Shown: one piece after another, positions 26,371-28,491 of the stretch
Layout of the letters: each line of letters begins with the position of its first letter
Position numbering within the stretch: position 1 is the stretch's first letter
Position numbers and translations under genes: made by a program
The notes under the pieces: generated by a model
Seen by the model: the letters and a program-made list of their open reading frames with translations, nothing else
Databases searched by the model: none
Told to the model about the DNA's origin: nothing
IMG/VR virus record: IMGVR_UViG_3300046171_000231
Coordinates: 124,001-188,000 of that record
Direction: 5' to 3' (one strand)
DNA length: 64,000 nt

Positions 26371-27275
26371 CTTTTATATCCAAATGCATCTATTGTATCG
26401 TGAGTATCAATTTCACTTTGCTCTGGTATTACCACACAATACCCAATACCAAGATTAAAAACTTTTTTCATTTCCTCTTCTGGTATCTCACCTGCTGACA
26501 TTATCTTTTGAAATATTTTAGGTAACGGCCAAGAATTATAATCAATATCTGCCTTTAATCCATCAGGTAAACATCGTGGTAGATTCTCTGGAATACCACC
26601 CCCAGTAATATGTGCCATACCTAATATAGGAACTTCATTTATAAGTTCCATTACAAGTGGAGCATAGATATGAGTTGGTGTTAAAAGTTTTTTCGTTGCT
26701 TTTAATTTTTTCTGTCTTATTAAATGATTAACTAAACTGTAACCATTGCTATGAATACCACTACTTTCGATTCCGATTATAAGGTCTCCTTCTTGAATAA
26801 TTGAACCATCAATTATTTCAGATGACTCAACGATTCCTGTACTAAATCCTGCGAGGTCAATATCAAAAGTCATTGGATGTTCAGCAGTTTCACCACCAAT
26901 AAGTTCAACACCTGCTAACTCACAACCTTTAATGATACCTGTCATAATATCATCTACAACAGGGTTTATTGTGTTTAGAGAAATGTAATCTAAAAAATAT
27001 AAAGGTTTTGCACCACAAGTAATAATATCATTGACACACATTGCAACCAAGTCAATACCTATAGTTTTATAGTTATCTAAACGATTACAAATACAAATCT
27101 TTGTTCCAACTCCATCAGTACCAGAAACTAAAATAGGTTCCTCATATCCACGAGGAACCTTATACATACCACCGAATCCACCGATGGTAGGTACTTTTTG
27201 TTTTAGTCTTTCAACGAAAGCATTACCTGCTTCAATATCAACACCCGATGATTTATAGGTAGTTTTTTCTTGCAT
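26343..27275 (-). CDS. purM: Phosphoribosylformylglycinamidine cyclo-ligase (AIR synthetase)
   Basis: YKSSGVDIEAGN, GTDGVGTK, MCVNDI, GGETAE, HSNGYSL and HITGGG motifs. Confidence 0.95.
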   Translation of the reverse strand: MQEKTTYKSSGVDIEAGNAFVERLKQKVPTIGGFGGMYKVPRGYEEPILVSGTDGVGTKICICNRLDNYKTIGIDLVAMCVNDIITCGAKPLYFLDYISLNTINPVVDDIMTGIIKGCELAGVELIGGETAEHPMTFDIDLAGFSTGIVESSEIIDGSIIQEGDLIIGIESSGIHSNGYSLVNHLIRQKKLKATKKLLTPTHIYAPLVMELINEVPILGMAHITGGGIPENLPRCLPDGLKADIDYNSWPLPKIFQKIMSAGEIPEEEMKKVFNLGIGYCVVIPEQSEIDTHDTIDAFGYKSWTIGKVVL

Positions 27276-27687
27276 GATGTTCTGGAACTATCTTACCCAA
27301 TTTGACGGTAAGTAATCCATCTTTAAATAGAACCTCTCTGACTTCAATATCTTCTGATAGTGACCAGGTTCTGTTGAAAGATCTCTGAGCCAGTCCTTGA
27401 TAGACATACTCGGATTCTTTCTCTTTTTCTTTTTTCTTTCCTTCAACAATAAGTTTTCCATATTCAGTATAAACATGAAGTTCATTTTTACTAAATCCTG
27501 CTAATGCTATTTCTAGTATTGATTCAACATTATTTACGTGAATAAGATTGTAGGGTGGATAGTTTGTTGCGGTTTCGTAAGAATTGAAAAAATTATCTAG
27601 GTATGAGTCCATACCAATTCCATTCTTAGAAATAATCTTCATTAGTTCTGGAAGATTAGCAGAGTGATACTTCTGTAGTGAAGTCAT
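27253..27687 (-). CDS. hsp20: Small heat shock protein (Hsp20/IbpA-like)
   Basis: NYPPYNL, LEIALAGF, GLAQRSFNRTW and DGLLTV alpha-crystallin motifs. Confidence 0.93.
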   Translation of the reverse strand: MTSLQKYHSANLPELMKIISKNGIGMDSYLDNFFNSYETATNYPPYNLIHVNNVESILEIALAGFSKNELHVYTEYGKLIVEGKKKEKEKESEYVYQGLAQRSFNRTWSLSEDIEVREVLFKDGLLTVKLGKIVPEHHARKNYL

Positions 27688-27750
27688 AATAGTTCTCCTT
27701 TAAAAGCGAGTGTAAATTGTGTCCCCGAAGGCGACATTACTAATTATAAC
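27688..27750 (-). promoter_or_regulatory. hsp20 extended -10 promoter and structured 5' UTR
   Basis: TGT-TATAAT at 27743-27751; cUUCGg hairpin; CUCGCUUU-U-AAAGGAG hairpin occluding the Shine-Dalgarno. Confidence 0.6.
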
Positions 27751-27785
27751 ACTAACGTCTTAATTAAGAGTGTAGAAAACCGCAT

Positions 27786-27830
27786 AAAAAAAGACCCTCT
27801 GCCCCACTCTCTGAGTTGCATCTTAGGTCT
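27786..27830 (-). terminator. Putative intrinsic terminator downstream of manA
   Basis: AGACCU...GGGUCU stem followed by U7. Confidence 0.55.
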
Positions 27831-28020
27831 AAAAAAGGAGGGAGGTTGGGTTCCTGTGTACCAACAAAAGATGGGCATTACTACAGAGTAAATACATCTT
27901 TGCCTGAGACCCGACTGGTAAGTCGATTCTGACTCGCATCAGCAGCACCACCTGTGTCTCATCACCTTAACCAGCGATTGCCAGTAAGTTTATTCAGTCA
28001 CTCCCATTGTTGCGTCCAAC
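27831..28020 (-). ncRNA. manA: Probable manA RNA motif
   Basis: GC-rich, structured ~190-nt intergenic RNA (GGGAGUGACUGAAUAAACUUACUGGC...GGUGAUGAGACACAGGUGGUGCUGCU...CCUCCC). Matches my recollection of manA and its known ibpA/hsp20 context; not confirmed by a covariance-model search. Confidence 0.7.
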
Positions 28021-28026
28021 AATATA

Positions 28027-28060
28027 AGTATAGCATAAAAAAAGGAGGTGTCAACCCTCC
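28027..28060 (-). promoter_or_regulatory. regA terminator with overlapping sigma70 promoter driving manA
   Basis: GGAGG-GTTGACA-CCTCC-T7 hairpin; TTGACA-16 nt-TATACT with TG extension. Confidence 0.7.
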
Positions 28061-28491
28061 CCTTCTTCTTTCTTCTTTTTAGCACCAATATTGTATTTCG
28101 TTTCTAAAATCCATTCACCTTTATCTTTAAATGATAACACTTTGATTTGATTAAGTGGTGCAATGTCCTGTATACGAACTACATCGACCACACCAACCAA
28201 TCCCCAATCAGCAAGAAGCTGAGCAATACGATTGCGACGCTGAACATCGTTAGAAGTAAGGTTAGCGTGTTTCCCGTCAAGAGCAAAAAGTTCTTTAAAG
28301 TGGACAAGATAGTACCTCCCTTGCTTATGAAGTATGTGACAACTTTGATATATTTTCTTTTCTTTCCTACTTGCTACACCAATTCTTGTGAGAGTTTCTC
28401 TGACTTTCAGGAAATCATCTGGTTCATTCAATGTTACCTCCACCATTTGGTCGGGAGACCATGTGACGACAGGTTCTTTAACAACACTCAT
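28051..28491 (-). CDS. regA: Translational repressor RegA
   Basis: DFLKVRETLTRIG...QSCHILHKQGRYYLVHFKELF. Confidence 0.95.
   Translation of the reverse strand: MSVVKEPVVTWSPDQMVEVTLNEPDDFLKVRETLTRIGVASRKEKKIYQSCHILHKQGRYYLVHFKELFALDGKHANLTSNDVQRRNRIAQLLADWGLVGVVDVVRIQDIAPLNQIKVLSFKDKGEWILETKYNIGAKKKKEEGEG

What the first reader, a model, noticed from the sequence alone, without database searches (positions are those of the whole stretch)
27685..27737. ROSE-like RNA thermometer in the phage hsp20 leader
The leader reads ...ACUCGCUUUUAAAGGAGAACUAUUAUG. UCGCU is the ROSE consensus U(U/C)GCU and pairs with the SD (C-G, U-A, C-G, bulged G, C-G, U-A, U-A), reproducing the bulged-G SD hairpin of bacterial small-HSP thermometers. 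It is preceded by a stable cUUCGg hairpin. I know of no description of such a thermometer in a cyanophage.
Basis: partly seen in the sequence, partly recalled or inferred. Interest (0 to 1): 0.68.

Follow-up and report, generated by a model that had tools for sequence, protein, structure and literature searches.

The report
ROSE-type leader of phage hsp20
The small heat-shock gene of this ocean cyanobacterial virus sits behind a short two-hairpin RNA leader that hides its ribosome-binding site; the leader is a diverged relative of the ROSE RNA thermometers of proteobacteria and is conserved in hundreds of marine phages, so these viruses probably tune chaperone synthesis to temperature, though that has not been tested.

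Summary
On the minus strand, upstream of an IbpA-like hsp20 (27253-27687), lie an extended -10 box, a cUUCGg hairpin with a bulged G (27720-27736), a 9-nt linker, and a 6-bp hairpin in which CUCGCUU pairs with AAGGAG around a bulged G (27695-27710). The AUG is unpaired. Taken alone this instance is not significant: fold z = -1.3, SD occlusion rank 15 of 73 genes, and the motif occurs at about chance frequency. Comparison decides it. All 314 cyanomyovirus hsp20 leaders examined have the element and the bulged G is invariant. Both helices show compensatory changes, and RNAalifold recovers the SD hairpin unaided. Rfam ROSE_3, the short two-hairpin Pseudomonas ibpA thermometer, gives full-length but sub-threshold matches on 11 of 29 phage leaders and nowhere else, with a near-identical hairpin I (GGAUGCC...GGGUCC). 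Sampled host genomes lack the element. It is therefore a diverged ROSE-type leader acquired together with an IbpA-type gene. Thermosensing itself is untested. Hairpin II is predicted to be about 4 kcal/mol weaker than in bacteria, and IbpA-style autoregulation is a plausible co-mechanism. I found no earlier description. A manA riboswitch candidate lies directly upstream.

The parts
27253..27687 (-). hsp20: a 144-aa IbpA-like small heat-shock protein, the regulated gene
   Evidence: Pfam HSP20 E=5e-14. The best NCBIfam match is IbpA at 89.5 bits, below the equivalog cut-off of 212. It is 37% identical (E=4e-25) to the IbpA that follows a bona fide ROSE_3. R93, Y34 and R97 of E. coli IbpA are conserved.
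27685..27687 (-). AUG start codon, unpaired, 7 nt after the SD
27695..27710 (-). Hairpin II, the SD-sequestering hairpin: anti-SD CUCGCUU (27710-27704, bulged G27707), loop UUA, SD AAGGAG (27700-27695)
   Evidence: Present in the MFE fold. RNAalifold consensus. Pair counts: pair 1 is CG 96 / GC 3 and pair 6 is UA 82 / AU 5 / UG 4. Present in 314/314 leaders with the G invariant. Predicted dG is -3.1 (20 C) and -1.1 (37 C) kcal/mol; the bulge costs about 4 kcal/mol.
27711..27719 (-). A/C-rich single-stranded linker
   Evidence: Unpaired in all folds. Conserved A/C-rich composition. Collinear with the ROSE_3 linker.
27720..27736 (-). Hairpin I: a stable 5'-proximal stem with a cUUCGg tetraloop and bulged G27732
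   Evidence: Three pairs show changes on both sides and 99.3% of cells are paired. Loops swap between UUCG, GAAA, GCAA, GUAA and AUUG. dG is about -9.3 at 20 C and -6.3 at 37 C. Counterpart of ROSE_3 hairpin I.
27743..27751 (-). Promoter-like extended -10 (TGTTATAAT); the inferred TSS is about 27736-27739, at the foot of hairpin I
   Evidence: Read from the sequence. In 258 of 294 relatives TATAAT, TTAAAT or TATAAATA ends 8-12 nt before the hairpin I core. In P-HM2, hsp20 is in expression cluster Mid (C) while the upstream regA is Late (D). The TSS is inferred, not mapped.
27786..27845 (-). Terminator-like structure: CCUCCCUCC (27845-27837, the 3' strand of manA's outer stem) can pair with GGGGCAGAGGG (27805-27795), followed by UCUUUUUUU (27794-27786)
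   Evidence: Fold at -13.1 kcal/mol. The simple terminator scan did not flag it because the loop is long. Relatives carry a stem plus T-run at the same place.
27835..28022 (-). manA RNA (RF01745), a riboswitch candidate, directly upstream
   Evidence: 188 bits against a gathering score of 55.2, full length. Lies directly upstream of hsp20 in 14 of 61 loci. Weinberg 2010 lists 'ibpA chaperones' among manA-associated genes.
28027..28054 (-). Near-consensus sigma-70 promoter driving manA (TTGACA, 16 nt, TG-n-TATACT)
   Evidence: 11 of 12 matches plus TG

Best explanation
The hsp20 mRNA of this T4-like cyanophage starts at its own promoter and carries a leader of about 50 nt. The leader is a diverged, minimal ROSE-type element related to the short two-hairpin ROSE_3 thermometers of Pseudomonas ibpA. 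Hairpin I is a stable tetraloop stem at the 5' end. It does not melt in the physiological range and probably protects the transcript and helps it fold. Hairpin II pairs CUCGCUU with the Shine-Dalgarno AAGGAG around an invariant bulged G, which keeps the helix marginally stable. At low temperature the SD is mostly sequestered and translation is damped. As temperature rises across the ocean range, hairpin II opens progressively and more Hsp20 is made. The gene and its leader came as one cassette from an IbpA/ROSE-type lineage, not from the cyanobacterial host. Shown here: the structure, its conservation and covariation, its similarity to ROSE_3, the IbpA-like nature of the protein, and its absence from sampled hosts. 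Inferred: the transcription start, the temperature response, and the role of hairpin I.
For: Anatomy and fold. Conservation: the element is present in 314/314 leaders from four divergent Hsp20 query groups. It is also present in all six more divergent cyanomyoviruses tested, at 25-69 bits. Covariation: RNAalifold recovers the SD hairpin unaided. On the alignment 98.9% of cells pair, against 93.3% in shuffles (0/500), and the slid controls fall to 42-66%. Compensatory variants are GUCGCUU...GAGGAC, GACGCU...GAGGUC and CUCGCUA...UAGGAG, plus the UUGCU form of the consensus. Specificity: the model gives one hit in 235.8 kb. Homology to ROSE_3: full-length matches of 19.9-28.6 bits fall on 11 of 29 phage leaders and nowhere else in those loci. 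The reciprocal search aligns 4 of 6 proteobacterial ROSE_3 sites in register. The joint alignment is collinear. Protein: IbpA-like. The published phylogeny places phage sHSPs with bacterial class A, not with cyanobacterial sHSPs (PMC3827213). Hosts: among 151 genomes of the host family only two sites hit, and neither is a host hsp20 leader. Validated analogue: Pseudomonas short ROSE-like thermometers have the same design, and there hairpin II alone confers thermoregulation (PMC3669281). Marginal stability is preserved: the median hairpin II dG at 20 C is -3.35 with an IQR under 0.4 across 42 variants, and the bulge, which costs about 4 kcal/mol, is never lost.
Against: No experiment shows a temperature response. 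No Rfam ROSE model reaches its gathering score, and the window's own leader gives no ROSE hit even at E<=10. Predicted hairpin II stability (-3.9 at 15 C, -2.3 at 30 C) is below that of bacterial ROSE_3 in its open state at 42 C (about -4.6), so repression may be weak or leaky. Predicted SD occlusion is unexceptional within this genome, rank 15 of 73. The core of helix II is invariant, so covariation rests on the terminal pairs and on a few lineages. Sequence-specific recognition by a protein would conserve those bases equally well. The TSS is not mapped. Transcripts reading through from the manA promoter would carry the leader internally. Ocean temperature changes little within one infection, which makes a classical heat-shock role less obvious (inference).
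Confidence: 0.6

Rival explanations
1. The leader is mainly an autoregulatory operator. Free phage Hsp20 oligomers bind their own 5'UTR and repress translation, as E. coli IbpA does. Titration of Hsp20 by unfolded or assembling proteins then relieves the repression. On this view temperature is at most a secondary input, and the two bulged-G hairpins are the protein's recognition features.
For: IbpA self-represses through its ROSE-type 5'UTR. This needs R93 (irreplaceable), an aromatic residue at Y34, and positive charge at R97/K98 (PMC10474464). R93, Y34 and R97 are conserved in all eight phage Hsp20s aligned with the real E. coli IbpA, whereas IbpB has Q and F at the first two positions. Near-invariant bases in the anti-SD and the similar (U/C)GC(C/U) bulged-G context in both hairpins would suit protein recognition. 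The weak hairpin II would benefit from a protein clamp.
Against: K98 is not conserved. No binding data exist for any phage Hsp20. In bacteria autoregulation works on top of the thermometer rather than instead of it, so this is more a complement than a rival.
Confidence: 0.2
2. The leader is a constitutive expression module with no sensing role. Hairpin I stabilises the 5' end against RNase E, and hairpin II merely sets a fixed, moderate translation rate. It would then be an inherited ROSE-derived relic kept for mRNA stability and dosage.
For: Hairpin I sits at the inferred 5' end and is very stable. Krajewski et al. propose transcript stabilisation for ROSE hairpin I. Hairpin II is weak, and its predicted SD occlusion is ordinary for this genome.
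Against: A fixed damper would not need an invariant bulged G or stability held within about 0.4 kcal/mol across 42 variants. Any hairpin this marginal responds to temperature to some degree for purely physical reasons.
Confidence: 0.12
3. The conserved bases are a DNA site, a Pho box bound by host PhoB, as listed for S-PM2d hsp20 (ATTCAAACTCGCTTAAATA at -31).
For: Table 2 of PMC10976474 lists it as a putative Pho box.
Against: The same paper reports that the fragment did not bind PhoB in EMSA and that the gene was not regulated by phosphate. In my alignments the proposed spacer (TCG) is the invariant part and the proposed repeat (the loop) is the variable part. The site lies downstream of the -10 box.
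Confidence: 0.01
4. It is a chance hairpin or a small upstream ORF rather than a functional RNA structure.
For: The single-sequence statistics are unremarkable. In the window a 17-codon frame runs from the AUG inside hairpin I to a UGA overlapping the hsp20 start.
Against: The element is conserved across the family with compensatory changes. The distance from hairpin I to the AUG varies freely modulo 3, at 85/132/77. The start of that frame is GUG, UUG or absent in relatives.
Confidence: 0.01

Closest known systems
Short ROSE-like RNA thermometers of Pseudomonas ibpA (Rfam ROSE_3, RF02523; Krajewski et al. 2013, PMC3669281)
   Same: The 5'UTR has two hairpins. Hairpin I is stable, temperature-insensitive and nearly the same in sequence (gGAUGCC...GGGUCc, with the same bulged G). 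A single-stranded linker of similar length follows. Hairpin II pairs U(U/C)GCU imperfectly with the SD. The AUG is unpaired. An IbpA-type gene lies downstream.
   Different: Scores are sub-threshold: at most 28.6 bits against 43 required, and no hit for the window itself. Hairpin II lacks the extra G-C and A-U pairs and is predicted to be about 4 kcal/mol weaker. Hairpin I is shorter, at -9 against -21 kcal/mol at 20 C. The leader is AU-rich. The promoter is phage-type (-10-like or late-like) instead of sigma-32. It is found in viruses of cyanobacteria. Function is untested.
Classical ROSE elements (RF00435, rhizobia) and the E. coli ibpA thermometer (ROSE_2, RF01832)
   Same: U(U/C)GCU pairs with the SD, with a bulged G opposite it. 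They control class A sHSP genes (the NMR work on ROSE is from my own knowledge).
   Different: They have three or four hairpins and are 70-120 nt long. The final hairpin is long and usually includes the AUG. No match at E<=10.
IbpA translational self-repression through the ibpA 5'UTR (PMC10474464)
   Same: An IbpA-like protein with R93, Y34 and R97 conserved sits behind a ROSE-type leader.
   Different: K98 is not conserved. No binding data exist for the phage proteins.
Cyanobacterial hsp17 thermometer of Synechocystis (single short hairpin; cited in PMC3669281)
   Same: A very short, weak SD-masking hairpin controls a small heat-shock gene in a cyanobacterial setting.
   Different: It is not ROSE-type and not related in sequence. 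The phage leader was not found in front of any host hsp20 in 151 genomes of the host family.
Phage lambda cIII RNA thermometer (own knowledge)
   Same: A temperature-sensitive mRNA structure in a phage.
   Different: It has a different fold and different logic (two alternative structures, with translation favoured at the lower temperature range). It is unrelated to sHSP genes.

Membership tests
ROSE-like RNA thermometers (as defined in PMC3669281) | Lies in the 5'UTR of a small heat-shock (class A / IbpA-type) gene | tested here: met
   Pfam HSP20 match. The best NCBIfam match is IbpA. 37% identical to an IbpA that follows a bona fide ROSE_3.
ROSE-like RNA thermometers (as defined in PMC3669281) | [quoted passage not shown] | tested here: met
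   UCGCU pairs with AGGAG in the MFE fold and in the RNAalifold consensus. Present in 314/314 leaders, and three carry UUGCU.
ROSE-like RNA thermometers (as defined in PMC3669281) | A bulged G lies opposite the SD | tested here: met
   G27707 is unpaired in every fold and invariant in 314 leaders. Its predicted cost is about 4 kcal/mol.
ROSE-like RNA thermometers (as defined in PMC3669281) | Two to four hairpins, with stable 5' hairpin(s) | tested here: met
   There are two hairpins. Hairpin I has three covarying pairs and dG of about -9 kcal/mol at 20 C.
ROSE-like RNA thermometers (as defined in PMC3669281) | Hairpin II melts with temperature and translation becomes temperature-dependent | not testable with these tools
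   Only nearest-neighbour predictions are available: dG goes from -3.9 at 15 C to -1.6 at 37 C.
Rfam ROSE_3 (RF02523) | Covariance-model score at or above the gathering score of 43 bits | tested here: not met
   The window and the whole genome give no hit at E<=10. Relatives score 19.9-28.6 bits.
Rfam ROSE_3 (RF02523) | Full-length collinear match at the sHSP leader | tested here: met
   11 of 29 phage loci match model positions 1-69 on the leader, with no ROSE_3 hit elsewhere. The reciprocal hits are in register. This holds for relatives, not for the window's own subtype.
Rfam ROSE (RF00435) and ROSE_2 (RF01832) | Any covariance-model match | tested here: not met
   No hit at E<=10 in the window region or in 29 related loci.
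manA RNA (RF01745), the adjacent element | Covariance-model score at or above the gathering score of 55.2 bits | tested here: met
   188 bits, full length, at 28022-27835 on the minus strand.
Cyanobacterial Pho box | PyTTAAPyPy(T/A) repeats bound by PhoB, with regulation by phosphate | tested here: not met
   Published EMSA and transcriptome data for S-PM2d hsp20 show no binding and no regulation. The conservation pattern is the reverse of what a Pho box predicts.
IbpA equivalog (NCBIfam NF008013) | Score at or above the curated cut-off of 212 bits | tested here: not met
   89.5 bits over nearly the full length. The protein is IbpA-like but not an equivalog.

The most novel reading that the evidence does not exclude
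An ibpA-plus-ROSE cassette of proteobacterial type entered the core genome of marine T4-like cyanophages, and also sits in a pelagiphage, a rhizobiophage and a Pseudomonas phage. It was stripped down to a minimal hairpin tuned to cool water. This would be the first ROSE-type thermometer known in a virus, and the first thermometer of this class working in cyanobacterial cells. In P-SSM2-like phages such as this one it lies in series with the manA riboswitch candidate, so one viral chaperone gene would combine a metabolite signal, temperature, and possibly free-chaperone feedback.
Probability: 0.4. Interest if true: 0.75.

Novelty: new member of a known kind. Interest (0 to 1): 0.62.

Why it matters
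hsp20 is one of the 25 genes shared by all cyanomyoviruses (PMC3037559), and these viruses kill a large share of the ocean's main primary producers. A conserved temperature-responsive or chaperone-responsive switch on a core viral gene would be a direct molecular link between sea temperature and viral infection. It can be tested with simple reporter fusions. It would also extend ROSE-type thermometers from alpha- and gamma-proteobacteria to viruses and to cyanobacterial cytoplasm. It gives a clear case of a regulatory RNA travelling together with its gene. The natural series of 42 hairpin II variants could be used to study how such thermometers are tuned to low temperature. On the practical side, a new Rfam family, or a widened ROSE_3 seed, would annotate hundreds of phage genomes and correct mis-called hsp20 starts.

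Tried and rejected
1. Single-sequence statistics (shuffle z-score, SD occlusion rank, motif frequency) do not set this leader apart. They were dropped as arguments for or against.
2. Rfam at gathering thresholds finds only manA. A permissive scan of the window finds no ROSE family.
3. Pho box: rejected on published EMSA data and on the conservation pattern.
4. Conserved uORF: rejected, because the frame is not conserved.
5. Host origin: R1 searched in 151 genomes of the host family gave only a phage-like contig in a single-cell genome and one hit inside a coding region. A further weak hit in that single-cell genome has no element and no sHSP gene downstream.
6. The scan for cellular relatives of Hsp20 returned mostly phage DNA binned into MAGs. 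The true cellular hits (Hellea, Maricaulaceae) are only 26-31% identical and showed no ROSE or R1 hit.
7. RNA reads: the runs are held only as contigs, so they cannot show a 5' end, strand or expression level. They show only that the region occurs in RNA libraries.
8. The MAFFT alignment misplaces hairpin I by one column between subgroups, so helix I counts were taken from the model-based alignment, which leans towards the model's structure.
9. A RegA operator or a T4 MotA box was considered from memory of their consensus sequences. No resemblance worth testing was found, and cyanophages are not known to have MotA.
10. The large protein searches, structure prediction and complex prediction were not used, because the family scans settled the identity of the protein.

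Full report
WHAT IS THERE. The window comes from a complete 235.8-kb T4-like cyanomyovirus related to P-SSM2. The feature lies on the minus strand. The gene order is gp62 clamp loader, regA (28051-28491), an intergenic region, hsp20 (27253-27687), then a purM-like gene. Reading the minus strand, the intergenic region holds the following, in order:
- a near-consensus sigma-70 promoter (28054-28027);
- a full-length manA RNA (28022-27835, 188 bits);
- a terminator-like structure ending in a U-run (27845-27786);
- an extended -10 box, TGTTATAAT (27751-27743);
- hairpin I with a cUUCGg tetraloop and a bulged G (27736-27720);
- a 9-nt A/C-rich linker;
- hairpin II, in which CUCGCUU pairs with AAGGAG around bulged G27707 (27710-27695);
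- 7 nt of spacer, then the AUG (27687-27685).

IS THIS ONE INSTANCE MORE THAN CHANCE? No. The leader folds no better than shuffles (z = -1.29). Predicted SD occlusion at 20 C ranks 15th of 73 SD-bearing genes in this genome. U(U/C)GCU occurs next to a strong SD at about the chance rate, 2 of 46 against about 1.2 expected. Hairpin II is weak: dG is -3.1 kcal/mol at 20 C and -1.1 at 37 C. The case rests on comparison with other phages.

COMPARATIVE EVIDENCE. I collected 328 hsp20 loci with four divergent Hsp20 queries against IMG/VR, plus isolate genomes, and extracted 314 leaders.
- All 314 have the same layout: a -10-like box, a tetraloop hairpin with a bulged G, an A/C-rich linker, (C/G)(U/A)(C/U)GCU, a loop of 3-8 nt, the SD, and the AUG.
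- On an unbiased MAFFT alignment of 129 non-redundant leaders, RNAalifold predicts exactly the SD hairpin.
- On a model-based alignment of 100 leaders, 98.9% of cells pair, against 93.3% in shuffles (0 of 500 reach it) and 42-66% when partners are slid.
- Helix I has three pairs with changes on both sides, and its loop switches among UUCG, GAAA, GCAA, GUAA and AUUG.
- Helix II has an invariant core, which is expected because the SD itself cannot vary. Its outer pairs show compensatory changes: C-G to G-C in GUCGCUU...GAGGAC, G-C plus A-U in GACGCU...GAGGUC, and U-A to A-U in the P-HM2 clade. Three leaders carry the alternative consensus UUGCU.
- The bulged G never changes, although removing it would add about 4 kcal/mol of stability.
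- Across 42 distinct hairpin II variants, the predicted dG at 20 C stays within about 0.4 kcal/mol (IQR).
- The covariance model R1 finds one site only in the whole phage genome.
- The distance from hairpin I to the AUG is not conserved modulo 3, which rules out a conserved uORF.

RELATION TO ROSE. The window's own leader matches no Rfam ROSE model even at E<=10. Related leaders do match.
- ROSE_3 (RF02523) gives full-length matches of 19.9-28.6 bits (gathering score 43) on 11 of 29 phage loci tested. The match is always on the hsp20 leader, and there is no ROSE_3 hit elsewhere in those loci.
- In the ROSE_3 consensus, hairpin I reads gGAUGCC...GGGUCc with a bulged G, which is almost the majority phage hairpin I. 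Hairpin II reads ACUcGCu...aGgAG.
- Bona fide ROSE_3 elements that I found in Pseudomonadota genomes (77 and 66.6 bits) precede IbpA genes behind sigma-32-type promoters.
- The phage model aligns with four of six such sites in register, though weakly, at 8-11 bits. A joint alignment is collinear from hairpin I to the AUG.
- Krajewski et al. (PMC3669281) validated these short elements experimentally. They describe a 61-62-nt UTR, a GC-rich hairpin I that does not melt, a single-stranded linker, a hairpin II that melts and by itself confers thermoregulation, and an unpaired AUG. This is the phage architecture.

THE PROTEIN AND THE ORIGIN OF THE CASSETTE. The phage protein scores best against IbpA. 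It is 37% identical to the IbpA behind a bona fide ROSE_3. The literature places it with bacterial class A sHSPs rather than with cyanobacterial ones (PMC3827213). In 151 genomes of the host family, R1 found only a phage-like contig inside a single-cell genome and one site inside a coding region. A further weak hit in that single-cell genome has no element and no sHSP gene downstream. Gene and leader therefore look like one cassette of IbpA/ROSE type, not a host-derived gene.

R1 hits directly upstream of hsp20 in six more divergent cyanomyoviruses (25-69 bits). It also hits there in Sinorhizobium phage Phosso (35.7 bits), Pseudomonas phage Ettore (18.3 bits) and Pelagibacter phage HTVC008M (14.9 bits).

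HOW IT PROBABLY WORKS. In 258 of 294 relatives a TATAAT, TTAAAT or TATAAATA box ends 8-12 nt before the core of hairpin I, so the transcript should start at the foot of hairpin I (inferred). In P-HM2, hsp20 belongs to the middle expression cluster while the upstream regA is late, which fits a separate transcription unit (PMC5082946 S2 Table).

Hairpin I (about -9 kcal/mol at 20 C) should stay folded and may protect the 5' end, as proposed for ROSE hairpin I. Hairpin II should hold the SD closed in the cold and open gradually. From the predicted free energies, I estimate that the open fraction rises roughly twenty-fold between 15 and 30 C.

Against a strong switch: hairpin II is about 4 kcal/mol weaker than bacterial ROSE_3 hairpin II, at -2.8 against -6.9 kcal/mol at 25 C. 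It could be a cold-tuned thermometer. It could equally be a leaky one that needs a partner.

A plausible partner is Hsp20 itself. E. coli IbpA represses its own translation by binding its ROSE-type UTR, and this requires R93, Y34 and R97/K98 (PMC10474464). R93, Y34 and R97 are conserved in all the phage proteins aligned with the real E. coli IbpA.

WHAT WAS ALREADY KNOWN.
- The association of manA RNA with 'ibpA chaperones' is in Weinberg et al. 2010.
- The bases of hairpin II were listed as a putative Pho box for S-PM2d hsp20, but the fragment did not bind PhoB and the gene did not respond to phosphate (PMC10976474).
- I found no paper in the library that describes an RNA thermometer in a cyanophage. 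A 2024 review treats thermometer-like regulation in phages as speculation.

VERDICT. Thermosensing remains an inference. I file the element as a new, diverged member of the ROSE-like class, closest to ROSE_3. It is not a member of the Rfam family by score.

Noticed in passing
window 27786-28054 (minus strand): A strong sigma-70 promoter drives a full-length manA RNA. The 3' strand of manA's outer stem (CCUCCCUCC, 27845-27837) can instead pair with GGGGCAGAGGG (27805-27795) just before a U-run. This looks like a terminator/anti-terminator expression platform reading into hsp20. manA lies directly upstream of hsp20 (gap 123-147 nt) in 14 of 61 loci and further upstream in 13 more.
   Followed up: partly
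window 27810-28025: In four RNA-library runs from two studies, summed contig depth over manA is 10-50 times that of the flanks. This may mean a stable, abundant manA RNA. However, depth is summed over related phages and contigs are a poor measure of expression.
   Followed up: no
L001, L002 versus window 27720-27760; read laying loose ends at 27721: Two IMG/VR contigs encode a 100% identical Hsp20 with an identical linker and hairpin II, but carry a different promoter and a GAAA-type hairpin I. Contigs in all four RNA libraries break at the same point (27721). Hairpin I plus the promoter seems to be exchanged as a module.
   Followed up: partly
L084 (P-HM2, GU075905.1) 593-665: The annotated hsp20 start of P-HM2 lies 72 nt too far upstream, so the annotated CDS swallows the whole leader. 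The conserved SD and AUG are at about L084:665. S-CAM7 has two closely spaced AUGs, and its annotated start may also be off by a few codons.
   Followed up: partly
L357 (Sinorhizobium phage Phosso), L358 (Pseudomonas phage Ettore), L356 (Pelagibacter phage HTVC008M): The same two-hairpin leader model hits directly upstream of the sHSP genes of three phages that do not infect cyanobacteria, at 35.7, 18.3 and 14.9 bits. The cassette is therefore not confined to cyanophages.
   Followed up: partly
L330-L335, L339; L333/L340 (Prochlorococcus sp. AG-418-C09, 189-kb contig): Cyanophage-type hsp20 contigs (53-60% identity) sit in MAGs labelled Psychromonas, Actinomycetota, Acidibacter, Thermoplasmata, Formosa and Paceibacterota, which probably reflects binning contamination. 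A 189-kb contig in a Prochlorococcus single-cell genome looks like an infecting myovirus.
   Followed up: no
window 27684-27737 (minus strand): A 17-codon frame starts at the AUG inside hairpin I and ends at a UGA that overlaps the hsp20 AUG. Neither its frame nor its start codon is conserved in relatives.
   Followed up: yes
hairpin I and hairpin II, all leaders (A1, A2): Both hairpins carry a bulged G in a similar (U/C)GC(C/U) context: AUGCC paired with GGGU, and CUCGCU paired with AGGAG. The same is true of the ROSE_3 consensus. This could be a shared recognition feature for a protein such as Hsp20/IbpA.
   Followed up: no
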